Virus record (IMG/VR): IMGVR_UViG_3300042350_004528
Location: 234,834 to 298,833 of that record
Reading direction: 5' to 3' (one strand)
DNA length: 64,000 nt
Shown here: piece after piece, positions 12,971-63,847 of the stretch
How positions within the stretch are numbered: position 1 is the stretch's first letter
Layout of the letters: every line of letters begins with the position of its first letter
The notes under the pieces: generated by a model
The model's database searches: none
What the model was told of the DNA's origin: nothing
The model's input: only the letters and a program-made list of their open reading frames with translations
Made by a program: the position numbers and the translations under genes

Positions 12971-13268
12971 ATGTCAACCATGGTTTTTTTTGTTGGGTGT
13001 TTAGTGCCTCAACTATCTTATTATAATTTTCTTCATAAAATCTTTCACCGTCTTCCGAATTTGCCCAAAATAGAAATCCTGGTTCAGTCTGCGTCCTCCC
13101 CAGGATTTCTTTTGTTGCTCTTCTATCTTTTTTAAGAAATGAAATACTAACATAGTTCAGTATAAACTTCCCATCAGTCTTTGACCAATACGCCAGTTGG
13201 CCAAATTTTTGTTTGTTCTTTACTCTGGCATTTTCAATAATCTCTATTAAAAATTTAACATTTCCCAT
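12930..13268 (-). CDS. Hypothetical protein
   Basis: 112-aa ORF. Confidence 0.5.
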   Translation of the reverse strand: MGNVKFLIEIIENARVKNKQKFGQLAYWSKTDGKFILNYVSISFLKKDRRATKEILGRTQTEPGFLFWANSEDGERFYEENYNKIVEALNTQQKKPWLTYEYEIKKPEQKEE

Positions 13269-14650
13269 TAACTAGATTCTTCCATATCAACCACACCCGA
13301 GTCTTTAACTATACCCTCAAGAACCTTAAACTCAAAAGATTTGTGTTTGTAAATTCTAGGTACCAGACCAGATTCTAATCTGACACATACACCCTCACGG
13401 ATATGGGTATCATCGAGCATTGATTTACCTTTAGAATAAATATCAACAAGTTCAGTAATCTTGTCATTAAAATCCCTATCACCGTTTATACTTGGATAGG
13501 TTAATTCCATTTCAATTCTTCTGAAACGTGTTATCTCTGGAACATGTTTTACACCTATCTCATTACATCTTTTAACAACATCATCCCAAGTGTAATCAAC
13601 TGATTGGCCATCTGGGTTGGTCATTGTCATACGGTACACATAAAAGTCTTGTTGGGCTGTCGAACAACCATATGAGTAAACCATGTGCTTTTTATCGCCC
13701 ATGTTGGAATACTGTTTCGTGAATTCCTTATCACCCATTTTACTTGTATCAACAGATGGCATGATTGGCGTATTCTCATTCTCATAACCAACAATCTCAA
13801 GATAAACAGTCTCACCTTTTCTTAGATTACCTTTGAAAAGAGCGAAAGCTTTATCTCTTATGGTTGGATCATGGAATTGGGTTGCATTTGATTTAGCCTC
13901 CTCCAAAACAACTCTGCGTGTACCAGTTAAATAAGCCCATTCAGTCTCGTTTATCTTGATACCAAGCTTAATCAATAATCTTTCAAACCAATTTAAATCA
14001 CGGTCAACCAACACATGCCCAACTCTATGAGAAGTTCCGTGTAGTTTTTCTGTGATGACAACCAAATCCTCACGATTTATTTGATGTACATTCTTACCAA
14101 AATGTTCGGTATCAATATGTTCCTTGAACATAACCGAAGTTTTTGCCACTCTGGTTTTTTTACCTTGGTTTTGTTGAGCGGCTTTTATTGTGTTCGGGTT
14201 GATGTACTTATTACAAATTGGTACACCACCCCATTCATCAATCTCAAGACCCTCATCAACCAGACCAGTCACATAAATGAAACCAAAACTGTGTAATGGT
14301 GTCCAGAAACCATCTGAGATTTCCCCACGAAATCTCTGGGCCCTAACCCTACGGTTATCATCAAACATACCAGCTTTATCATCTGGGAATTTGTTCTTTG
14401 TTTTATCTCGATATAAGTTATTCGCATGGCAAAACTCATGAGATAACTGACCATCACATGGGAAGTATACCCCCCAATGATCTTCTTTGCAATCTAAACC
14501 AACCACCACTTGATTACCGTGGCATGTCGCTAATTGCACCTTATCCGCATTAGGATGCGGTCTAACGTTTTTAAGTTTTGTTACTATTCCTTTATACATA
14601 TTTTTTACTTTGATTCTACCATTACGTAAGTACCCTCTACCATACCCCAT
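13268..14650 (-). CDS. ATP-dependent RNA ligase with N-terminal OB/tRNA-binding-like domain (DRB0094/Rnl5-like)
   Basis: N-terminal HPNADKVQ...FPCDGQL, motif I TEKLHGTS, REGVCVR, YKHKSFEF. Confidence 0.8.
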   Translation of the reverse strand: MGYGRGYLRNGRIKVKNMYKGIVTKLKNVRPHPNADKVQLATCHGNQVVVGLDCKEDHWGVYFPCDGQLSHEFCHANNLYRDKTKNKFPDDKAGMFDDNRRVRAQRFRGEISDGFWTPLHSFGFIYVTGLVDEGLEIDEWGGVPICNKYINPNTIKAAQQNQGKKTRVAKTSVMFKEHIDTEHFGKNVHQINREDLVVITEKLHGTSHRVGHVLVDRDLNWFERLLIKLGIKINETEWAYLTGTRRVVLEEAKSNATQFHDPTIRDKAFALFKGNLRKGETVYLEIVGYENENTPIMPSVDTSKMGDKEFTKQYSNMGDKKHMVYSYGCSTAQQDFYVYRMTMTNPDGQSVDYTWDDVVKRCNEIGVKHVPEITRFRRIEMELTYPSINGDRDFNDKITELVDIYSKGKSMLDDTHIREGVCVRLESGLVPRIYKHKSFEFKVLEGIVKDSGVVDMEESS

Positions 14651-23978: not shown

Positions 23979-26063
23979 ATGGCACAAAAAGTATCATATA
24001 CAGGGGTTTTCTTGGACAAGGATTCAAGAGCCGTATTAGAAAAAGAGTTCAAATCGCAGGTTCCTGATGGATGGGAGTGGATTGCGCATCATATGACCAT
24101 AACTTTAGGGGAAATGGTTGATAAATCGGAATTGGGTAAACAAGTTGCCCTTAATATAGTTTCATTTGGTAAAGATGATAAAGTCATGGCAATTGGTGTC
24201 AAGGGTTACCCTAGTAAAAATGAAAAACCGCACATTACTTTAGCCGTTAATCGCGCTGAGGGTGGTAAACCTTATATGAGTAATTTAATTAAGGAATGGG
24301 TACCATACTCGATCGGTGCCATATTAACTGGTGTTGTCAGTGAATACCCGCCACAATCTAAAGAAACACTTAATGAAGCTTATGATATTAAATCATTACC
24401 GTTCTATAACGATGTTATCAATAAAAACGGTAAAATATATCAGGTTGGTGGGGCTGTTAGAGATTTGTATCTGGGTAAACAATCTAAAGACCTTGACATC
24501 GTTATTAGTGGAATACCAGCTAAGGAACTCGAAGATGTGTTGAAAAAATATGGTAAAGTTGATATGGTTGGTGCGTCATTTGGTGTTATTAAGTTCACAC
24601 CACCAGATGGTGAAGAAATTGATATTGCAATACCAAGAACTGAAAAGAAGAGTGGTGTTGGTTATCAGGGTTTTGATGTGTCGGCTGATCACACTCTCCC
24701 TATCGAAAAGGATCTTGAGAGAAGAGATTTCACAATAAATTCAATCGCTAAAGATAGTGATGGGAATGTTATTGATCCATTCGGTGGGTTAAAGGATCTT
24801 GATTCGAAGGTTATCAAATTAACAAACCCTAAGGCTTTTTCAGATGACCCATTAAGGATGTTAAGGGCGATTCAATTTGCGTCTAGGTTTGGTTTTAAAA
24901 TAGATGAGGAAACGTTTGATGCTATTAAAAAGAATGCGATGACTATTGACGAAATATCAAAAGAGAGAATATTGATAGAGTTTGATAAAATCGTAAACAA
25001 AGGTAATCCCAGAGTCGGAGCTGAGTTATTAGTTTCAAGTGGATTGTACAGGGGCATATTCGGTACCGAGTTTGATGGTGATTTTGAACCGTTTGACCAA
25101 GTAACTAGGAACAGTGAGTTCGCTTACTGGTTGATCCAATCGTTCACCGAACAACCAGACCAATACTATAAGAATATAATGAAAGGTGACATCGATACGG
25201 CTAGAGAGATATCAGCTTTGGCTTATATGTATAACAACTTACCTGGTAACGACAAAGCAAAACAAAGATTTGTTTATTTTAATATAAATAAGATATCACC
25301 ACAGATGTTTAATAGTAATTTCGTGAGAAGTATATTGAGTGATGTTATCAATGACTTTGATTCTCAAAAATACCCAGCTGGTTATTCGGATTTAAAAGTC
25401 AATGGTAATGATTTAATGGCAATGGGTTTAAAAGGTAAAGCTGTTGGTGATATGTTAAATAAATTAATCTCTGCAATATATTCTGATAAAATTGAAAATA
25501 CAAAGAATGGTTTGTTGGGTTTTGTTGAGAGGAATAAGGATATGTTAAATGAATCTGTTGGTGGTACAAATAAGAATAGAGTTGTGTTTTATGATTTTGA
25601 TGGTACTTTAATGGATAGTCCACTTCCTGACACAGGTAAACAAATCTATAAAGAAAAAACTGGTAATGTATACCCACATCAAGGTTGGTGGGGTCGTGCT
25701 GAGAGTTTGGATTTAAATGTCTTCGACATAAAAACAAATCCAGATGTTGAGGCTAAATTTAGAGCTGACTCATCGGATCCAAATACGCATGTTGTTTTAT
25801 TAACCAATAGGTTGTCAAAACTTGAGGAACCAATTAAAAAAGTTCTTGACAAACATAATATGGTATTCGATTTTTATTCTTTTAAAAATGATGGTCGTGA
25901 AAAGGGTGAACGTGTTTTGGATATTTTAGCCAAAGTATATCCGAATACGAATGAAATTGAATTTTATGATGACGATGAGCGACACATTCAAAATGTAAGA
26001 GATAATTTAATCGACACCGATTACGATTTCAAGGTGAATCAAGTTATTGATGGTAGATTATAA
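23979..26063 (+). CDS. Three-domain RNA end-repair protein: 2H phosphoesterase + CCA-adding/poly(A)-pol-type nucleotidyltransferase + HAD phosphatase
   Basis: HHMT and PHIT (2H); VGGAVRD...DLDIV, RRDFTINS, DDPLRMLRA (class II NTase); FYDFDGTL...LLTNR...FYDD (HAD). Confidence 0.85.
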   Translation: MAQKVSYTGVFLDKDSRAVLEKEFKSQVPDGWEWIAHHMTITLGEMVDKSELGKQVALNIVSFGKDDKVMAIGVKGYPSKNEKPHITLAVNRAEGGKPYMSNLIKEWVPYSIGAILTGVVSEYPPQSKETLNEAYDIKSLPFYNDVINKNGKIYQVGGAVRDLYLGKQSKDLDIVISGIPAKELEDVLKKYGKVDMVGASFGVIKFTPPDGEEIDIAIPRTEKKSGVGYQGFDVSADHTLPIEKDLERRDFTINSIAKDSDGNVIDPFGGLKDLDSKVIKLTNPKAFSDDPLRMLRAIQFASRFGFKIDEETFDAIKKNAMTIDEISKERILIEFDKIVNKGNPRVGAELLVSSGLYRGIFGTEFDGDFEPFDQVTRNSEFAYWLIQSFTEQPDQYYKNIMKGDIDTAREISALAYMYNNLPGNDKAKQRFVYFNINKISPQMFNSNFVRSILSDVINDFDSQKYPAGYSDLKVNGNDLMAMGLKGKAVGDMLNKLISAIYSDKIENTKNGLLGFVERNKDMLNESVGGTNKNRVVFYDFDGTLMDSPLPDTGKQIYKEKTGNVYPHQGWWGRAESLDLNVFDIKTNPDVEAKFRADSSDPNTHVVLLTNRLSKLEEPIKKVLDKHNMVFDFYSFKNDGREKGERVLDILAKVYPNTNEIEFYDDDERHIQNVRDNLIDTDYDFKVNQVIDGRL

Positions 26064-38701: not shown

Positions 38702-38776
38702 GCGACAATAGTAATAAAAAATGTGGATAAAACAAATAAAAAAAGGGTAAAATATTTTACCCTTTTTAAATTTCTG

Positions 38777-39152
38777 TGGAGTCGGAGGGATTCGAACCCT
38801 CGTCTCGTTTAGCCATTCAATAATTCTCATTCACATGCTTAGTTCATTTTTCTAAACAAACAAAATATTTGTCTTCACTAACCCAGAAGTTCAATAAAAC
38901 TGGAATACCTTTTTTGGAGTTCCCACCTCCCACCTGGCATCTAAGGGTTTTTGCAGTTTTAACTGACAGTTGTTGGCTTACGCCAATTCGTAGTCTGCAA
39001 ACTCAACTGGCTGACCGTTCAACACGATGTTGCCTTCAGCGTCAATGTAGCTTTCGCCATCTGAAATTGTGTATAGGTTATTTAAGTGTTTCCGATACTA
39101 ACACCACATGCAAATTAAAGAACGAATCTACCGATCGATTCCAGTCGACCCC
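38777..39152 (-). ncRNA. ssrA: tmRNA; tag ORF 39058-38978 = GESYIDAEGNIVLNGQPVEFADYELA*
   Basis: 5' GGGGTCGACTGGAATCGA; 3' T-arm GAGGGTTCGAATCCCTC + CGACTCCA with G3:U70. Confidence 0.92.
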
Positions 39153-40442: not shown

Positions 40443-40524
40443 GGACTAACCTTTACAAACTTTCCGAAGAAAGCTTTTGGGGTTGAACCAAATTTAACCA
40501 GAGTTAGTTGCTGAATTTAGTCCC
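40443..40524 (-). ncRNA. Stem + TTCAGCAA motif small RNA candidate
   Basis: GGACTAA/TTAGTCC closing stem, TTCAGCAA after the 5' arm, starts just after a TAnnTTTG promoter. Confidence 0.55.
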
Positions 40525-40580
40525 AATTGCGATACAAAGATAAGAAATGTTTTTTTAATAAACAAGTATTTTTGAAAATT

Positions 40581-44504: not shown

Positions 44505-44576
44505 TACTCCCTACGGGAATCGAACCCGTCTTTTCAGGATGAAAACCTGATGTCCTAACCGATAGACGAAAGGAGC
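44505..44576 (-). tRNA. tRNA-Glu(TTC)
   Basis: TCAGG-TTTTCAT-CCTGA. Confidence 0.92.
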
Positions 44577-44953
44577 GTAAATTGATGATTCGACCACATT
44601 TCTTACCAGAGCGGAACTAAGGGGTCTATTGGTACCGTACCCTCATGCACTCGATTGGGATTGCAGCCCCGTGAGTCTCCCGATGCGCCAGATTGTCTTT
44701 CCTATACTTTCGCTAACCTATCTGTTATTGGGTTCTGGCAGTGTCCCAGTTAGCATACTCCCATAGTACTTTTTCCTCATCAATTCTTTTTTTTTGCCTT
44801 TACCTTTCAAAGACTAAGTAGGTTTAGTTGCGGACTTTCACGTCTTATGCGTCCATAAGACTCCTTCCTCTGAGTGCTTCTCTTTTTACAGTCTTTAAAC
44901 TATCAAGGTACGTTATCTCAGTTTTCAACACAAAACCACTGTGTTAGCAATCG

Positions 44954-45027
44954 CGATCCCGATAGGATTCGAACCTATGACCTACTGCTTAGAAGGCAGT
45001 TGCTCTATCCAGCTGAGCTACGGGATC
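44954..45027 (-). tRNA. tRNA-Arg(TCT)
   Basis: ACTGC-CTTCTAA-GCAGT. Confidence 0.92.
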
Positions 45028-45036
45028 GTAAATTTC

Positions 45037-45098
45037 GGGTTGATCTTTTTAGTCGGATTTACAAGTCTGATTTTTTAAGATTTGCTGAACTCAACCCC
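45037..45098 (-). ncRNA. Stem + TTCAGCAA motif small RNA candidate
   Basis: GGGTTGA/TCAACCC closing stem, TTCAGCAAA, internal CAGACTTGTAAATCC resembling the Tyr anticodon arm with one extra nt. Confidence 0.55.
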
Positions 45099-45116
45099 AA
45101 TAAGTAAATAAAACAC

Positions 45117-45235
45117 AGGATGCGTTTATACGTGCTCTAACCAACTGAGCTATCGACCTCATACGAAGCCGAGTGGGACTCGAACCCACGACCCCGAGGT
45201 TGACATCCTAAAGTTTAATTTGCGGAATGCATCCT
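45117..45235 (-). ncRNA. Circularly permuted tRNA-like RNA (YrlA/Y-RNA-like)
   Basis: AGGATGC/GCATCCT terminal stem + TTCCGCAAA; T-arm precedes D-arm; acceptor stem closed by a GTAT loop. Confidence 0.75.
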
Positions 45236-45249
45236 CTTTGTTTTATTTG

Positions 45250-45321
45250 CGGTCTATGCGGGAATCGAACCCGCCTCACCGCCGTGACAGGGCGGCATCC
45301 TAGCCGATGAACGAATAGACC
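45250..45321 (-). tRNA. tRNA-Asp(GTC)
   Basis: CCGCC-CTGTCAC-GGCGG, G73. Confidence 0.92.
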
Positions 45322-45327
45322 GTTTAG

Positions 45328-45449
45328 AGCCCAGAGCTGGATTCGAACCAGCGCCTTTTTTTTCCATAAAAAATTGTTAGATAGTGATTTGCTGAAATCA
45401 TCCACACTGGATGACTCTTTTTTTAATGCTACCGCTACACCATCTGGGC
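45328..45449 (-). ncRNA. tRNA-like RNA with anticodon arm replaced by a hairpin + TTCAGCAA module
   Basis: GCCCAGA/TCTGGGC acceptor, D-loop-like segment, TCATCCA-GTG-TGGATGA hairpin + TTTCAGCAAA, GCTGG-TTCGAAT-CCAGC. Confidence 0.7.
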
Positions 45450-45453
45450 TTTG

Positions 45454-45527
45454 CTCCCCCGTCAGGGCTCGAACCTGAGACCTACTGATTAACAGTCAGT
45501 TGCTCTAACCAGCTGAGCTACAGAGGA
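45454..45527 (-). tRNA. tRNA-Asn(GTT)
   Basis: ACTGA-CTGTTAA-TCAGT. Confidence 0.92.
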
Positions 45528-45710
45528 ATATTTGATGGTGTCACAACTATATACCATCAGCTACGGAACCCTTCTGTTAATAAGTAAGTAGGAGATTTAA
45601 AAATCTCGTCCGTATCAAATCCACGCCATTGGTTACGTTGTCTCACGACAAGAGGCTTTACCAAGGCAAAGTTTTAATTTTTTCACCAATATGTCAAAGA
45701 ACAATCTTTG

Positions 45711-45861: not shown

Positions 45862-46001
45862 AAGTAAAGATAATGGTTGGATTCCCGTTACACCCAACTC
45901 TGTACTGCTTCTTGAGTTTTACAAGCGCTTGGCAGAGGGAGCTGATTTCTTCGGCCCAAACTCGCTTGTCGACAGCTTATTTGGAGAAACCCATTATCTT
46001 C

Positions 46002-46100
46002 GTAGCGTATGTGGGATTCGAACCTAAACCAACTATTCATGCTTCGTTGGCCACCTGTACACGGGCTCATGACTGCGCCGTGCTCTCCAAGAGTACGCTA
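46002..46100 (-). ncRNA. tRNA-like RNA (acceptor + T-loop, non-canonical core)
   Basis: TAGCGTA/TACGCTA acceptor, GG-TTCGAAT-CC T-loop, internal TCATG/CATGA stem; no 7-nt anticodon loop found. Confidence 0.5.
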
Positions 46101-46334
46101 TGTATTTTAAAAGTTACAATTCATCGGAATGTGTTTGTTTTCCATTAAAAGTAGAGTTTGTATTATTTGCCGAATACATTCCCGAATTGTGGTACAAAAG
46201 TAAGAACAAAATTTTTAACCTGCAAATACTTTTGAAACTTTTTTCATTTTTTTTCAAAGAACTTATTTTAACGCTTGCTCTCGCAATTGTGGTACAAATG
46301 TAAGAACGAAACTTCAAACTCGCAAACTTTCAAC

Positions 46335-54314: not shown

Positions 54315-54524
54315 ATGAGAATAATAATCAAAGAATTACCAAAGATAAATCACATATATCTATTTGATCAAACAATGCGCCCACTCTTTATGGACATTGT
54401 AAGTAAAAGGAATACAAAATCTTATATAAAAAAAATGATAAAAAAGTACGATATTATTGATTTTGATTTTGTTTCTGCGATAGATTTATCAAATACTACC
54501 GATAGTTTTAGGGGCCATATTTGA
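54315..54524 (+). CDS. Hypothetical protein
   Basis: 69-aa ORF diverging from 54238. Confidence 0.4.
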   Translation: MRIIIKELPKINHIYLFDQTMRPLFMDIVSKRNTKSYIKKMIKKYDIIDFDFVSAIDLSNTTDSFRGHI

Positions 54525-56181
54525 TAATAGAAACAGTACCATTGCTGTTATTTTCCATAATTTGCTTGGTTTCTTGGCTGATTTTTGTGTCATCAATACA
54601 GATTGCGACAATATGAGGTAATTTACTCAATCCAACTGGTATTTTATCCAACTTAAGGTTCATATGAACATCCACGAGAAACAAATCATTACAGTTTGTT
54701 ATATCCTCTTTTATTTCCCTTAAATCGCAACTCGATGCGGTTAATCTAACTAGTTTTTTAAGTTTACCGATGTTAGCGGGTAGTTGTTTGAGTTTTTGGT
54801 TATTATCCAAAACCAACTCAGTCAATTTTTCACATTCACCAAGATCGCCAATTTCTCTGATATCACATCCAGCACAATCAAGATACTCCAAAGATTTTAA
54901 CTCGGAGAACCACTCAGGTACTGAGGTAATTTTCTTGTTGTTTCTAAATTTAATCTTTTTTAGGTTTTTCAAGTCTTTAATCGACTCTGGTAAAAAAGTT
55001 ATACCACAGTCACTTAAATCAAGACTTTTTATACTAGTAATCTCACCTATTTTTTCAAGATATTCCGATTCAATTTTATGACCAGAAAAATCAACGGTTT
55101 CTGGTTTAGATTCCTTGAATATTTTGATGATCTCATCTCCAAAGCCAAGATTCAATAAATATTTAATATCATCAACCTGTTTGTTGTTTTTCTTTTGGCG
55201 ATACGCTAAGACACGCTTAATGATGTAGTTTCTAAAATACAATTTAATATCTTTATTGTTGAAAAGAAATTCATTGATGTTTATACTTTTATCGTTCGCA
55301 TCCATATATTGATTATCCTCAAAATGGAATTGTAGGCGATATTCGGGGTGTTTTGATATGGCTTTTTTGGAACCATACCCTTTCTTAATTAAAACGAATA
55401 ATTCACCTCGGCTATGATAACTATCAAACATATTACCATAACGAGTACCAGCAGTGCACCAGGTTGTGTATTTACCAAACTCAATATTTGCTTGGCGATC
55501 ATGGGTGATTACTATAACCCATTCACTATTTTCAAAAACAAGTTCAGCTTTACCCTCGACTTTCTTATTATCGACAAAATTTTGGATACAGGTTATTTCT
55601 TTATGGTCTAAAGTATGAATCGAATCATCGCCAGTATCGGTACTCATATATGGTTTAACCATATTAACAAATTCATTGATGTCTTTAAATCGATTAATAT
55701 CGCGATTCTCAACAGAAAGTACATTTGTTTTCTTTAAGAATGAAAATACCTCTAGTGCTTCAATAACTTTAGATTGCAAATCCTCAAAAAAGTTTTGGTA
55801 TTCTGGTCTTATCTCAGCGACCGAATTTTCTTTGCTTGCTAGATAAGCATCATCAATTCTATCTCTAATGATATTTTTATACAAGTTAATAAACCAACTA
55901 ACGTATTCTTTATTATGGCTTGGGTCACACTCAACAAAAAAGTTAAATAATAACTCCATTGGGGTTTTACCTTCCAAATATGTACCGTTTCTTTGATATT
56001 GGTTGCGATAAAACTCCATAAATAAATTATCACCGTCATACATTTTAACAGAGTCAACAACAAACTCTTTATCTGGGACTACATGTTTACCATAGATATT
56101 TTTATCAACGGCCTTTTTATGATATTTCTTAAAGATATCAAAAACGTACTCTAATCGTGTTTTCTTGTCCTGTTCAGTCAT
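54508..56181 (-). CDS. Protein with central TTWCTA-type phage domain and C-terminal leucine-rich repeats
   Basis: LDLSDCGITFLPESIKDLKNL, LDCAGCDI, LVLDNNQKLKQLPANIGKLKKL repeats. Confidence 0.8.
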   Translation of the reverse strand: MTEQDKKTRLEYVFDIFKKYHKKAVDKNIYGKHVVPDKEFVVDSVKMYDGDNLFMEFYRNQYQRNGTYLEGKTPMELLFNFFVECDPSHNKEYVSWFINLYKNIIRDRIDDAYLASKENSVAEIRPEYQNFFEDLQSKVIEALEVFSFLKKTNVLSVENRDINRFKDINEFVNMVKPYMSTDTGDDSIHTLDHKEITCIQNFVDNKKVEGKAELVFENSEWVIVITHDRQANIEFGKYTTWCTAGTRYGNMFDSYHSRGELFVLIKKGYGSKKAISKHPEYRLQFHFEDNQYMDANDKSININEFLFNNKDIKLYFRNYIIKRVLAYRQKKNNKQVDDIKYLLNLGFGDEIIKIFKESKPETVDFSGHKIESEYLEKIGEITSIKSLDLSDCGITFLPESIKDLKNLKKIKFRNNKKITSVPEWFSELKSLEYLDCAGCDIREIGDLGECEKLTELVLDNNQKLKQLPANIGKLKKLVRLTASSCDLREIKEDITNCNDLFLVDVHMNLKLDKIPVGLSKLPHIVAICIDDTKISQETKQIMENNSNGTVSIIKYGP

Positions 56182-62206: not shown

Positions 62207-62266
62207 TGAGTGGGGGTCTATTGTATTTGGCTTTTCAATTTAAATAACAATTGCTGTAACCACTCA
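62207..62266 (-). ncRNA. Stem + TACAGCAA motif small RNA candidate
   Basis: TGAGTGG/CCACTCA closing stem, TTACAGCAA after the 5' arm. Confidence 0.6.
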
Positions 62267-62446: not shown

Positions 62447-63847
62447 TTAAGCTGTAATAGGCTCGTAACGTGCACTATGTACAGTTTTATTCATGATGCT
62501 GATTGGTGACATATCCTCACCAGTCAACAATGATTTTAAAATTGCTGGAGAAAACCCACTCACCAATGCAGTACCGTTGTCGGTAGTCTGAACTGGGTAG
62601 TTTCCACCATTTCTGCTTTGAATGTTCCAGAATACCAATTTTGGCATTGTGTAACCAGCGGACTCGTATTGTTCACGAATCATATCCAAAGCGCTGTTTT
62701 TATAACGAGTTGCTGAATTGAACTCCATATCTGACATAATCAGAATAGTTGTTGGCATCTCAGACTCTGGTAAGCTGAATTTTTTAGCTTGATTCAAGAT
62801 CAAATTAAAAACCGCTTCCAAATTTGTACTCATACCCCAGTCAGCTCTCGCCAATTGCATGTGGCGATCACTTAAGTTACCGTTAAGGTATTGCAATTGT
62901 GGGTTTTCACTAAAAGTTATGAAAGCGTCTTTAAACTTACCTTCATTTCTTTCTGAAATGTAAAGACCCAAAGAGATACAAACATCCATACATGTAACGT
63001 TAGCGTTACCACCAGCTGGTGAACTCATTGATCCAGATACATCGCATACTGGTAAAACTCGCTCATTGTTACCTTCCATGTAATTAGGGAGTGAAGCCCA
63101 TTGCTTCATAGCCATGGTTTTGTCCCCTCTAACTAATGTTTTCAACACATCATATGGATATACCGCAGATGCGTTTACCTTAGTATCGCCAGTTTTGTAG
63201 GCTGTAAAACGTTCAGCATCGTGTTTACCAAATGCTTTAGTATAACGAGCCATAGCAACAGATGGTACGTGTTCATATGTAACAACACCCCATTGATTTG
63301 AGCACATAAGTTGTTCAACCACCTTGGTTTTTTCAACCAACATCTTACGATATTGTTTAGGTGATAGCTTCATATAACGCTCCAATGCGATTGCTTCTTT
63401 ACCTTTACGAGGCATCCATTTAGCGCAAAGACCATTATTTTCGTTAAGAGCATTAACGATAAGGTTTTTTGCCTGGGTATCCAATGAGGTGCCAAATAAC
63501 ACTAAAAGATCGTCCCAACGTCCATATTCTGGAACGTATGATAGGTTTTTAGCCAAAGCCTCGTTATGGTTTTCAACCAAATAAAGCATTAAATCCTTGA
63601 AAATTTGACGCTCACCCGCACCACCACGAACGTCACGAGCCCAGAACATAGTTCTAAGAGCGGTTAATGGACTTTCGTTGAAAGCTTTTGAAAAGTTAGC
63701 GATTAATCTTCCCTTATCTTGACCACGCATCGCACCGATGGTGAAAAATAAATCAACACAAGCGTTCAATGATGAACTGTTAGTAACCATTCCGTTTTCG
63801 GTTACATTGTCTCTTGTTCTAAGAGCATTTACTAATGAGTTTGCCAT
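62447..63847 (-). CDS. DUF2828-type TROVE/Ro60-like protein with C-terminal vWA domain
   Basis: FWARDVRGGAGER, YGRWDDLL, AKWMPR; MIDAS DVSGS, SDMEFN, VFWNI, VSGFSP. Confidence 0.8.
   Translation of the reverse strand: MANSLVNALRTRDNVTENGMVTNSSSLNACVDLFFTIGAMRGQDKGRLIANFSKAFNESPLTALRTMFWARDVRGGAGERQIFKDLMLYLVENHNEALAKNLSYVPEYGRWDDLLVLFGTSLDTQAKNLIVNALNENNGLCAKWMPRKGKEAIALERYMKLSPKQYRKMLVEKTKVVEQLMCSNQWGVVTYEHVPSVAMARYTKAFGKHDAERFTAYKTGDTKVNASAVYPYDVLKTLVRGDKTMAMKQWASLPNYMEGNNERVLPVCDVSGSMSSPAGGNANVTCMDVCISLGLYISERNEGKFKDAFITFSENPQLQYLNGNLSDRHMQLARADWGMSTNLEAVFNLILNQAKKFSLPESEMPTTILIMSDMEFNSATRYKNSALDMIREQYESAGYTMPKLVFWNIQSRNGGNYPVQTTDNGTALVSGFSPAILKSLLTGEDMSPISIMNKTVHSARYEPITA

What the first reader, a model, noticed from the sequence alone, without database searches (positions are those of the whole stretch)
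45117..45235. Circularly permuted, anticodon-less tRNA mimic
Minus-strand order: AGGATGC, TTCCGCAAA, linker, GGGGTC, T-arm GTGGG-TTCGAGT-CCCAC, TCGGCTTC-GTAT-GAGGTCGA (acceptor stem closed by a loop), D-arm GCTC-AGTTGGTTA-GAGC, linker, GCATCCT. It has a perfect tRNA elbow but no CCA end and no anticodon, which is the YrlA topology. It could bind elbow-recognising proteins (RNase P, modification enzymes, defence nucleases).
Basis: partly seen in the sequence, partly recalled or inferred. Interest (0 to 1): 0.8.

Follow-up and report, generated by a model that had tools for sequence, protein, structure and literature searches.

The report
Phage tRNA-shaped Y RNA, permuted
A freshwater jumbo phage carries a small expressed RNA that is a tRNA with its ends rewired, most likely a Y RNA that works with a Ro60-like phage protein, and the same RNA signature turns up next to that protein's gene in many phages, including laboratory ones.

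Summary
On the minus strand, 45235-45117 reads closing strand, T-arm, loop-closed acceptor stem, D-arm, closing strand. It is not a tandem-tRNA artefact. In 28 homologues from other phages, 99.5% of pair cells are standard pairs, all 7 closing-stem pairs show changes on both sides, and the acceptor hairpin always forms from unrelated sequences. Four metatranscriptomes hold matching contigs (0-1 differences).

The YrlA-like reading holds, with two corrections. First, the RNA is not anticodon-less. It keeps a 3+2 bp anticodon-type stem with a 7-nt loop, and the new ends leave from that stem's 5' strand. Second, it fails strict YrlA membership: 45.9 bits against Rfam's cut-off of 69, no GNCGAA motif, and no TROVE gene within 4 kb.

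Instead the closing stem is followed by a conserved UUCNGCAA motif, and the window encodes a DUF2828/DUF7788 protein with a Ro60 fold 17 kb away. Stem+motif RNAs lie beside DUF2828 genes about 25 times more often on the gene's strand than on the opposite strand, also in four cultured phages (Felixounavirus, Listeria, Campylobacter, Citrobacter).

Best reading: one of about six Y-type RNAs of a Ro-like phage particle. Binding is inferred. This is a new variant of a known kind.

The parts
45229..45235 (-). 5' strand of the terminal (closing) stem, AGGATGC
   Evidence: Pairs with 45117-45123. All 7 pairs show changes on both sides across 28 homologues, with 98.5% of cells paired. There are 11 different stem versions.
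45218..45227 (-). Conserved single-stranded motif TTCCGCAAAT (family consensus U-U-N-C-N-G-C-A-A), directly 3' of the closing strand. Proposed binding site for the Ro-like protein.
   Evidence: The C-GCA core is invariant in alignment A2. The motif sits at the same model position in distant members. It lies inside the RNA contigs.
45197..45209 (-). Anticodon-type hairpin: AGG, 7-nt loop ATGTCAA (triplet GUC), CCT
   Evidence: Aligns with the anticodon arm of tRNA-Met genes. Its 3 bp are paired in 28 of 28 sequences, with one double change. The loop triplet varies: GTT 19, ATT 5, and GTC, TCT, GGT.
45190..45196 (-). C42-G43, which pair with C27-G28 (45132-45131), then variable loop GGGTC
   Evidence: The CG/CG pairs are invariant in 28 sequences. 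G15 with C48 fits the Levitt pair (direct reading).
45173..45189 (-). T-arm GTGGG-TTCGAGT-CCCAC
   Evidence: 5 bp, 100% paired, 3 pairs with changes on both sides.
45153..45172 (-). Acceptor-type stem closed by a loop: TCGGCTTC-GTAT-GAGGTCGA
   Evidence: Folds end to end with 8 bp. Homologues form 5-10 bp hairpins from unrelated sequences. Run X17 has a variant in the loop at 45163.
45131..45152 (-). U8-A9, D-arm GCTC-AGTTGGTTA-GAGC, A26, C27-G28
   Evidence: Invariant block TAGCTCAG..GAGCACGTA in A2.
45117..45130 (-). Linker TATAAAC and 3' strand of the closing stem, GCATCCT. An invariant G follows at 45116.
45037..45097 (-). Second stem+motif RNA (GGGTTGA-G-TTCAGCAAAT ... TCAACCC) with no tRNA-like part, analogous to YrlB
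   Evidence: L124 has the same layout with a different stem, GGAATGC/GCATTCC. Three of the four RNA contigs reach into it and X17's spans it.
45328..45449 (-). Unpermuted tRNA-like gene. The anticodon arm is replaced by a hairpin TCATCC-AGTG-GGATGA plus TTTCAGCAAAT, the same module on a normal tRNA scaffold.
   Evidence: Rfam tRNA 39.6 bits with a 55-nt insert. Fold. Analogues in L038, L212, L214 and Citrobacter phage Ci1.
46126..46182 (-). Stem+motif module GGAATGT-A-TTCGGCAAAT ... ACATTCC
   Evidence: It has no depth in the four RNA runs, so its expression is not shown.
40443..40523 (-). Stem+motif module GGACTAA-A-TTCAGCAAC ... TTAGTCC
62207..62266 (-). Stem+motif module TGAGTGG-TTACAGCAAT ... 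CCACTCA, about 180 nt downstream of the stop codon of the Ro-like gene
62447..63847 (-). Gene for a 466-aa DUF2828/DUF7788 protein with a Ro60 fold (helical-repeat ring plus vWA domain with an intact DxSxS MIDAS motif). Proposed protein partner.
   Evidence: Pfam and PHROG assignments. AlphaFold2 pLDDT 95.4. The top 6 Foldseek PDB hits are all Ro60. hhalign against phage TROVE gives 93.9%. Invariant D269, S271, S273.

Best explanation
The element is a phage Y RNA of the YrlA type. It is a stable small RNA made of a complete tRNA-shaped module (T-arm, D-arm, loop-closed acceptor, short anticodon-type hairpin). Its 5' and 3' ends leave from the 5' strand of the anticodon stem and pair into a 7-bp terminal stem. 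Directly after that stem's 5' strand lies a conserved single-stranded UUCNGCAA motif.

I propose that the terminal stem plus motif is the docking site for the phage's Ro60-fold protein (DUF2828/DUF7788, 62447-63847), in the way the terminal stem plus GNCGAA/CGAA motif docks Y RNAs on Ro60/Rsr. The tRNA-shaped module would then stick out as a handle. It could tether the Ro-like ring to proteins that recognise the tRNA elbow, or gate access to the ring, during infection.

The candidate is one of about six stem+motif RNAs in this window. They share the docking module but carry different interior modules.

Shown: the structure, its conservation and covariation, its presence in RNA libraries in colinear form, the Ro60 fold of the protein, and the genomic linkage of stem+motif RNAs to DUF2828 genes.

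Inferred: physical binding, which part of the RNA is bound, and the downstream effect (RNA decay control, tRNA repair or quality control, or counter-defence).
For: Structure:
- Rfam YrlA matches end to end, 45.9 bits, E = 3e-9.
- On 28 homologues, 99.5% of cells are paired, 11 pairs have changes on both sides, and 0 of 500 shuffles reach this.
- Acceptor hairpins form from unrelated sequences.

Expression:
- RNA contigs with 0-1 differences occur in 4 metatranscriptomes from 3 studies: 45054-45232, 45064-45231, 45010-45203 and 45052-45202.
- Nearby intergenic DNA has zero depth in the same runs.
- No listed joint links the two halves of the anticodon stem.

Protein:
- AlphaFold2 pLDDT 95.4, pTM 0.94.
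- The top six PDB matches are all full-length Ro60 (9KOP E = 4.5e-9; 2I91 and 1YVR TM about 0.62). The next hits match only the vWA domain, at E about 2e-3.
- hhalign against phage TROVE proteins: 93.9% probability, E = 1.6e-7 over 374 columns.

Linkage:
- In 80 DUF2828 loci there are 75 stem+motif modules on the gene's strand and 3 on the other (8.5 against 0.34 per 100 kb). Shuffled sequence gives 0.22 and unrelated viral loci 1.0.
- 56 of the 75 lie within 500 nt of the gene.
- Permuted tRNA-like members with the same stem+motif sit 58-550 nt from DUF2828 genes in L338, L364, L354, L358, L348 and L235. L212 has three modules within 350 nt upstream of the start codon.
- The same holds in cultured phages: Listeria List-36, Campylobacter Los1, E. 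coli Felixounavirus finno (which includes a permuted tRNA-like one) and Citrobacter Ci1.

Positive control:
- The same search recovers classic YrlA directly upstream of canonical TROVE genes.

Literature:
- YrlA and Y RNAs dock on Ro through a terminal stem and a 5' motif (PMC4201824, PMC12135203).
- Bas63 gp130 of this protein family is Ro60-like and counters the ppl defence. Its Y RNAs were guessed to hide among the tRNA genes (PMC11482910).
- A Listeria P100-like phage has abundant unexplained ncRNAs next to its homologue (PMC12282133).
Against: - No binding data exist for any DUF2828 protein with any RNA.
- In this window the gene is 17.2 kb from the candidate, not within 4 kb, although a smaller module lies 180 nt from the gene.
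- The motif is not the GNCGAA of Ro/Rsr ligands.
- The Rfam score is below the curated threshold.
- In the candidate's closest subfamily (A2 loci), the fetched flanks rarely contain the gene, so whole-genome co-occurrence is shown for only two contigs (the window, and contig 3300042549_008312 through L127 and L290).
- The RNA contigs carry no strand information and run on into the neighbouring module, so discrete ends are not proven.
- The module at 46126-46182 has no RNA depth.
- Strand bias near the gene would also arise for any co-transcribed RNA element.
Confidence: 0.68

Rival explanations
1. It is a free-standing tRNA decoy. The tRNA-shaped RNA acts alone, soaking up or misdirecting host factors that read the tRNA elbow or anticodon loop (anticodon nucleases, RNase P, modification enzymes). 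The terminal stem only protects the ends, and the motif serves something else.
For: The elbow is complete and the anticodon-type loop has U33 and A37. The loop triplet changes between close relatives, as might happen in an arms race. It sits in a tRNA array, in a genome that also encodes an RNA ligase and a CCA-adding enzyme.
Against: This does not explain why the same stem+motif occurs on RNAs with no tRNA part. It also does not explain why those RNAs cluster beside DUF2828 genes on the same strand. More distant permuted members lack the anticodon hairpin.
Confidence: 0.14
2. The stem+motif is an RNA processing or transcription signal of tRNA operons (a nuclease entry site or an anti-termination element), not a protein-docking site of an RNP. 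The tRNA-like part is a by-product.
For: Modules lie between tRNAs in the window and in Felixounavirus finno. Two of them follow TAnnTTTG promoter-like boxes.
Against: The motif and both stem strands are retained in the RNA contigs. Modules occur next to DUF2828 genes even where no tRNAs are nearby, as in the gap directly upstream of the Campylobacter Los1 gene. Conservation and covariation of the whole tRNA-like module show that it is under selection.
Confidence: 0.1
3. It is a permuted tRNA gene. The transcript would be circularised at the terminal stem and opened at the acceptor loop by RNase P and 3' trimming, then given CCA, to yield a working tRNA, as with the permuted tRNA genes of the red alga Cyanidioschyzon.
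For: All tRNA parts are present, including an anticodon-type loop with triplet GUC. Unpermuted versions with an insert at the same stem position exist. The phage encodes an RNA ligase and a CCA-adding enzyme. M. smegmatis YrlA can be cut by RNase P and receive CCA (PMC4201824).
Against: - No listed joint links 45131 to 45209, and the RNA contigs are colinear with the DNA.
- The triplet varies among close homologues and includes AUU.
- The window already has tRNA-Asp GTC and tRNA-Asn GTT next door.
- Distant members lack the anticodon hairpin.
- No bulge-helix-bulge motif or splicing endonuclease was found.
- It does not explain the stem+motif RNAs that lack tRNA parts.
Confidence: 0.05
4. It is a dead relic or an artefact: a deletion between two tandem tRNAs, or a chance juxtaposition of a T-arm and a D-arm.
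For: Tandem tRNAs can mimic YrlA. This is the caveat in PMC4201824, and my own model R1 produced such a false hit in L370.
Against: The two acceptor strands pair with each other. The element is conserved at the same position between tRNA-Asp and tRNA-Arg in related phages. Covariation is strong. RNA contigs exist.
Confidence: 0.02

Closest known systems
YrlA (Y RNA-like A; Rfam RF02553; Chen et al. 2014, PMC4201824)
   Same: The chain order is the same: terminal stem, T-arm, loop-closed acceptor-type stem, D-arm, terminal stem. The T and D loops are of tRNA type, with all elbow contacts possible. A stem-loop lies upstream of the T-arm (their 'V'). A conserved motif follows the 5' strand of the terminal stem. 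A smaller sibling RNA without the tRNA part lies next to it (like YrlB). A Ro60-fold protein is encoded in the same genome.
   Different: The motif is UUCNGCAA, not GNCGAA(N)G. The partner gene is DUF2828/DUF7788, not Pfam TROVE, and lies 17 kb away rather than within 4 kb. The Rfam score is below the gathering score. The element sits inside a tRNA array. The 'V' hairpin is recognisably an anticodon arm, and the ends leave through its 5' strand. The family also exists in unpermuted form.
Phage Ro60 with Yrl1/Yrl2 of Thermus phage phiLo (PMC12135203; PDB 9KOP, 9L5Y)
   Same: It is a phage-encoded Ro60-fold protein with several small stem-closed RNAs carrying a short conserved motif beside the stem. 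9KOP is the best structural match of the window's protein.
   Different: phiLo Ro60 is a recognisable TROVE protein. Its Yrls lie directly upstream, carry CGAA, and are not reported in that paper as tRNA-like. Binding and attenuation of host PNPase were shown there, whereas nothing has been shown for this system.
Bas63 gp130 (Felixounavirus) Ro60-like counter-defence protein (PMC11482910)
   Same: It belongs to the same protein family (Felixounavirus homologues at about 41% identity). The gene lies directly upstream of a tRNA array. The authors guessed that Y RNAs hide among the tRNA genes.
   Different: No RNA partner was identified there. Here candidate partners are located in the related phage finno, between its tRNAs.
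Permuted tRNA genes of Cyanidioschyzon merolae and some green algae (own knowledge)
   Same: The 3' half of the tRNA is encoded upstream of the 5' half, and the acceptor ends are joined by a short linker.
   Different: Those are matured into working tRNAs through a circular intermediate, using a bulge-helix-bulge motif and the eukaryotic or archaeal splicing endonuclease. There is no evidence here for such processing, the triplet is unstable across relatives, and the element is linked to a Ro-like protein.

Membership tests
YrlA (Rfam RF02553 / Chen et al. 2014) | T-type and D-type stem-loops in the order T then D, with an acceptor-like stem-loop between them | tested here: met
   Direct reading. 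The Rfam alignment covers model positions 1-114. Covariation in the T-arm and an acceptor hairpin in all homologues.
YrlA (Rfam RF02553 / Chen et al. 2014) | Nucleotides for tRNA tertiary contacts (U8-A14, R15-Y48, G18-U55, G19-C56, T54-A58) | tested here: met
   All are present by direct reading of 45131-45194. The blocks are invariant in 28 homologues.
YrlA (Rfam RF02553 / Chen et al. 2014) | Terminal stem formed by the 5' and 3' ends | tested here: met
   45235-45229 pairs with 45123-45117. All 7 pairs covary.
YrlA (Rfam RF02553 / Chen et al. 2014) | GNCGAA(N0-1)G motif near the 5' end (Rsr recognition) | tested here: not met
   The motif is absent from 45117-45251. The conserved motif at that place is UUCCGCAAAU, family consensus UUNCNGCAA.
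YrlA (Rfam RF02553 / Chen et al. 2014) | Encoded within 4 kb of, and on the same strand as, a TROVE-domain Ro60 orthologue | tested here: not met
   None of the 20 ORFs scanned, which include every ORF of 387 aa or more, has Pfam TROVE. The Ro60-fold DUF2828 gene is on the same strand but 17.2 kb away.
YrlA (Rfam RF02553 / Chen et al. 2014) | Score at or above Rfam's gathering score (69 bits) | tested here: not met
   45.9 bits. The classic TROVE-adjacent viral examples L114, L094 and L027 also fail this threshold, so it is conservative for phages.
YrlA (Rfam RF02553 / Chen et al. 2014) | Bound by Ro/Rsr, carries tRNA-type modifications, cleavable by RNase P | not testable with these tools
   Needs immunoprecipitation, modification mapping and an RNase P assay.
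Y RNA in the broad sense (ligand of a Ro60-fold protein) | A Ro60-fold protein (helical-repeat ring plus vWA/MIDAS domain) is encoded by the same genome | tested here: met
Y RNA in the broad sense (ligand of a Ro60-fold protein) | The RNA genes are genomically linked to the protein gene across genomes | tested here: met
   75 modules on the gene's strand against 3 on the opposite strand, and 56 of 75 within 500 nt. Full-length hits of model R1 next to DUF2828 genes. Four cultured phages.
Y RNA in the broad sense (ligand of a Ro60-fold protein) | Expressed as a discrete small RNA | tested here: inconclusive
   RNA contigs with 0-1 differences in 4 runs, two of which end at 45231/45232 near the 5' end of the stem. 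However, the contigs carry no strand information and run on into the next module.
Permuted tRNA gene (Cyanidioschyzon type) | Matured through joining of the permuted ends into a tRNA with a continuous anticodon stem | tested here: inconclusive
   No such joint is among those listed, and the contigs are colinear. However, Logan contigs drop rare forms and 15 joints were not shown.
Permuted tRNA gene (Cyanidioschyzon type) | Stable anticodon identity within the family | tested here: not met
   GTT 19, ATT 5, and one each of GTC, GTC (window), TCT and GGT.
Two-piece (permuted) tmRNA | Match to a permuted tmRNA model, with a tag reading frame | tested here: not met
   ARAGORN finds none here. The only Rfam tmRNA_permuted match in the 45020-45460 scan is a 13-bit, 17-nt fragment at 45258-45274, in the neighbouring tRNA-Asp. 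A standard tmRNA lies at 38774-39152.

The most novel reading that the evidence does not exclude
Stem+UUNCNGCAA is the docking tag of a large, undescribed class of phage Y RNAs that serve DUF2828-type Ro proteins. The tag is grafted onto interchangeable bodies: a permuted tRNA, a normal tRNA with an extra arm, or bare hairpins. The tRNA-shaped members, whose anticodon-type triplet switches between close relatives, would act as bait or sensors for host tRNA-targeting defences. They would bring cut or attacked tRNA-like substrates to the Ro-like ring and to the phage's ligase and CCA-adding repair enzymes.
Probability: 0.15. Interest if true: 0.85.

Novelty: new variant of a known kind. Interest (0 to 1): 0.7.

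Why it matters
Ro60 and its Y RNAs are a conserved but poorly understood RNA-surveillance particle. In phages, the papers I found record it for mycobacteriophages, two jumbo phages (Caulobacter CcrColossus, Bacillus phage G) and one Thermus phage.

Three points come out of this work:
- A much more common phage protein family (DUF2828/DUF7788: 710 phage records,694 representatives) has the Ro60 fold.
- It comes with its own recognisable RNA partners, marked by a short motif different from the Ro/Rsr one.
- These RNAs lie unannotated, or are called pseudo-tRNAs, in and around the tRNA arrays of well-studied phage groups.

This makes an open question directly testable. One family member (Bas63 gp130) was recently found to counter a bacterial defence system, with its RNA partners unknown (PMC11482910). 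A Listeria phage study was left with abundant unexplained transcripts beside its homologue (PMC12282133).

It is also a natural example of one RNA design occurring in both circularly permuted and unpermuted forms.

Tried and rejected
- **Rfam's proximal closing pair** (AGGATG at 45209-45204 with CATCCT): rejected. Relatives have AGGCTG or AGGCTT there, while the distal pair covaries.
- **Motif enrichment in the window as a plain 10-mer:** 31 matches against 29 expected, so not enriched. Only the combination with an adjacent stem is informative.
- **First loose module scan:** background was too high, at 4 per 100 kb in shuffles. I replaced it with a stricter definition.
- **phmmer of the DUF2828 protein against PDB sequences:** no Ro60 hit. 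The relationship appears only by fold and by profile comparison.
- **megablast of the region against GenBank phages:** only tRNA fragments matched, with no close cultured relative.
- **Strict pattern for close homologues:** only the window's own contig and L097 matched.
- **First strict permuted-topology scan of the A1-protein loci:** found only the window's contig, because it required perfect stems and short loops. Reading the tRNA-Asp to tRNA-Arg gaps found the homologues.
- **DUF2828 genes within the short loci fetched around the candidate's closest homologues:** none found apart from L212 and L235.
- **Model R1 hit in Campylobacter phage Los1:** it is two tandem tRNAs, so I discarded it.
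- **RNase P RNA idea for the 44577-44952 gap:** by eye it has a GAAAGUCCG-like stretch, but there is no complementary P4 strand and no Rfam hit. Dropped.
- **Literature search for DUF2828:** nothing relevant.
Full report
**Setting**

The window is a 64-kb piece of a low-GC (about 33%) phage genome. It is identical, over the regions compared, to IMG/VR contig IMGVR_UViG_3300042350_004528 (298,833 bp). The phage is found in lake and freshwater metagenomes. The window has 27 tRNA genes and a tmRNA, all on the minus strand. It also encodes a head maturation protease, a T5-A1-like DNA transfer protein, an RNA ligase and a CCA-adding enzyme fused to an RNA-repair HAD domain. The finding lies in the 221-nt gap between tRNA-Asp (45249-45321) and tRNA-Arg (44953-45027), where no detector called a gene.

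**1. The observation**

- AGGATGC (45235-45229)
- TTCCGCAAAT (45227-45218)
- a T-arm, GTGGG-TTCGAGT-CCCAC (45189-45173)
- an 8-bp acceptor-type stem closed by GTAT (45172-45153)
- TA, then a D-arm, GCTC-AGTTGGTTA-GAGC (45150-45134)
- GCATCCT (45123-45117)

All bases needed for the tRNA elbow are present. The two acceptor strands pair with each other and not with outside partners, so this is not the T-arm of one tRNA followed by the D-arm of the next.

**2. Is it real?**

Rfam's YrlA model matches end to end (45.9 bits, E = 3e-9 for the 441-nt search), below the curated 69 bits.

Comparative data settle the question. Related phages keep an element at the same place between tRNA-Asp and tRNA-Arg. 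A pattern search of IMG/VR gave 28 distinct permuted homologues. On that alignment:
- 99.5% of pair cells are standard pairs, against 21-44% when the partners are slid by 1-3 columns.
- 11 of 21 pairs have changes on both sides.
- None of 500 shuffles reaches the observed values.
- All 7 pairs of the terminal stem covary, across 11 stem versions.
- The acceptor segment has unrelated sequences and lengths of 18-38 nt, yet folds into a hairpin in nearly every homologue.

**3.

The same pattern search also returned ordinary tRNA-Met genes, whose anticodon arm reads CGAGG-CTCATAA-CCTCG-AGGTC. The family's conserved block AGG-CTGTTAA-CCTCG-TGGTC (AGG-ATGTCAA-CCTCG-GGGTC in the window) aligns with it. 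So the 'linker' is an anticodon-type hairpin with a 7-nt loop carrying U33 and A37 A38.

C27-G28, which follow the D-arm, pair with C42-G43. A29-G31 come from the upstream segment. The anticodon stem is therefore discontinuous, and the new 5' and 3' ends leave between positions 28 and 29. The triplet in the loop is not stable: GTT in 19 sequences, ATT in 5, and GTC, TCT and GGT in the rest. That argues against a decoding role.

The same design also exists unpermuted. In L038, L231, L251, L212, L214 and Citrobacter phage Ci1 the acceptor is open, and the terminal stem is instead capped by a loop at the same 28/29 position. The window itself has such a gene at 45328-45449.

**4. The motif and its siblings**

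Directly 3' of the terminal stem's 5' strand lies a conserved single-stranded motif, consensus UUNCNGCAA, with an invariant C-GCA core.

The window's minus strand holds five RNAs with a 7-bp terminal stem followed by this motif:
- 62266-62207
- 46182-46126
- 45235-45117 (the candidate)
- 45097-45037
- 40523-40443

The hairpin+motif inside the 45328-45449 gene makes a sixth. The interiors differ and only the candidate has a permuted tRNA body. A conserved terminal stem and motif with variable interiors is the design of Y RNAs, and a large tRNA-like member with a small neighbour recalls YrlA and YrlB (PMC4201824).

**5. The protein**

ORF 62447-63847 (minus strand, 466 aa) is DUF2828 + DUF7788, and PHROG 850 'RNA-binding protein'. 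Sequence search against the PDB finds nothing. Other evidence shows it is a divergent Ro60 homologue:
- An AlphaFold2 model built on 135 sequences is very confident (pLDDT 95.4, pTM 0.94).
- Its six best PDB matches are all full-length Ro60: Thermus phage Ro60 9KOP at E = 4.5e-9, and Xenopus Ro60 at TM about 0.62. After those the scores drop to matches that cover only the vWA domain.
- A profile comparison with the canonical TROVE proteins found beside classic YrlAs gives 93.9% probability and E = 1.6e-7 over 374 columns.
- The MIDAS residues are invariant.

The family is in 710 phage records.

**6. Linkage of RNA and protein**

As a positive control, my search recovered classic YrlAs directly upstream of canonical TROVE genes on the same strand (L114, L094, L027, L242).

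For DUF2828, I scanned 80 loci centred on the gene with a strict module definition. The results:

| Set | Modules per 100 kb per strand |
|---|---|
| Gene's strand (75 modules) | 8.5 |
| Opposite strand (3 modules) | 0.34 |
| Shuffled sequence | 0.22 |
| Unrelated viral loci | 1.0 |

Of the 75, 56 lie within 500 nt of the gene, and 42 of the 80 loci have at least one that close.

A covariance model of the candidate's family finds full-length permuted tRNA-like members beside DUF2828 genes in L235, L338, L358, L364, L348, L354 and L329. L212 has three modules in the 350 nt upstream of the start codon.

Cultured phages show the same pattern:
- Listeria List-36 has two modules upstream of the gene.
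- Campylobacter Los1 has two.
- Felixounavirus finno has four, scattered in the tRNA array downstream of the gene. One of them is a permuted tRNA-like RNA.
- Citrobacter Ci1 has one, plus a 'pseudo-tRNA' that is an unpermuted member.

In the window the candidate is 17 kb from the gene, but one small module lies 180 nt downstream of it.

**7. Expression**

Contigs from four metatranscriptome runs (three studies) match with 0-1 differences over 45054-45232, 45064-45231, 45010-45203 and 45052-45202. Two of them end 3-4 nt from the first base of the terminal stem. Intergenic stretches at 45552-45679 and 45872-46300 have zero depth in all four runs, which argues against DNA carry-over. No listed joint links the two parts of the anticodon stem, and the joints that are listed carry foreign letters typical of other organisms' tRNAs.

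There are limits to this evidence. The contigs have no strand, they run into the neighbouring module, and they drop rare forms. So a discrete RNA is likely but not proven.

**8. Mechanism**

Best supported: the terminal stem plus UUNCNGCAA docks the RNA on the phage's Ro-like ring, and the tRNA-shaped body is presented as a handle or gate. This parallels Y RNAs on Ro60/Rsr, where the RNA tethers the ring to PNPase or blocks its cavity (PMC4201824, PMC12135203).

The structure, conservation, expression, protein fold and linkage are shown. Binding and the downstream effect are inferred.

A functional hint comes from Bas63 gp130, a member of this protein family that counters the ppl defence (PMC11482910). 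Another is the neighbourhood of RNA repair genes, both here and in Listeria phage List-36, which has RtcB nearby.

Four rivals are scored in the report: a free decoy, a processing signal, a true permuted tRNA gene, and a relic.

**9. Comparison and novelty**

It works like YrlA but fails three defining membership tests: the GNCGAA motif, a TROVE gene within 4 kb, and the Rfam threshold. I therefore file it as a new variant, a Y-type RNA of DUF2828-type Ro proteins.

The Ro60 likeness of the protein has been noted before (PMC11482910, PMC12282133, and GenBank names such as 'Ro-like RNA binding protein'). I found no description of the RNA partners, their motif, or the permuted and unpermuted pair of forms. 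The library does not include subscription journals, however.

**10. Verdict**

The element is ordinary in kind (a Y RNA) but leads to a broad, testable and apparently undescribed RNA family.

Noticed in passing
window 45328-45449 (-): A tRNA-like gene with acceptor, D-arm and T-arm, but with about 55 nt in place of the anticodon arm. The insert holds a hairpin TCATCC-AGTG-GGATGA followed by TTTCAGCAAAT. ARAGORN misses it and Rfam tRNA scores it 39.6 bits. L097 (5402-5516) has an analogous gene.
   Followed up: partly
window 44577-44952 (-): A 375-nt gap between tRNA-Glu and tRNA-Arg has no Rfam match at E <= 1. It is nevertheless covered by RNA contigs with no base differences (two small gaps) in two metatranscriptomes (44584-44912 and 44553-44918). 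This is an unknown expressed RNA.
   Followed up: partly
L034 7656-7860 (+) and L106 323-527 (+): A permuted tRNA-like unit (T-arm, closed acceptor, D-arm) is nested where the anticodon arm of an outer tRNA-like molecule should be. This would give an RNA with two elbows and no anticodon.
   Followed up: no
L135 14689-14794 (+): It lies at the same genomic position and has the same terminal stem and motif as the candidate. Inside, however, a D-arm is followed directly by a T-arm, with no acceptor hairpin and no anticodon arm: a minimal elbow on a stem.
   Followed up: no
window about 46183-46205 and 40524-40545 (-): TAnnTTTG boxes lie just upstream of two stem+motif modules. To my knowledge this is the -7 promoter element of Bacteroidota, which suggests the host phylum and that these small RNAs have their own promoters.
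   Followed up: no
L124-L130, e.g. L124 9678-10378: In several relatives an ORF of about 700 nt is inserted between tRNA-Asp and the element. It looks like a homing endonuclease by eye but was not tested.
   Followed up: no
window 23979-26063 (+) and 13268-14650 (-): A CCA-adding enzyme fused to a 'Swiss Army Knife' RNA-repair HAD domain, and an RNA ligase. Listeria phage List-36 has an RtcB ligase 1.3 kb from its Ro-like gene (L367 5804-7015).
   Followed up: partly
L368 5006-5119 (Citrobacter phage Ci1, OR515478.1 77205-77318): The record annotates a 'tRNA-Pseudo-AAC / tRNA-OTHER'. It is an unpermuted member of this RNA family, with a hairpin plus ATTCAGCAT insert after ACGTAT, 600 nt downstream of the DUF2828 gene.
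   Followed up: partly
L084 7080-7126 (+); L097 2197-2268 (-): A Pistol ribozyme match above Rfam's gathering score in one viral contig, and an HDV-like ribozyme match below it (32 against 44 bits) in the 362-kb relative's tRNA region.
   Followed up: no
window 54508-56181 (-): A 557-aa protein with C-terminal leucine-rich repeats in a phage genome. Its function is unknown.
   Followed up: no
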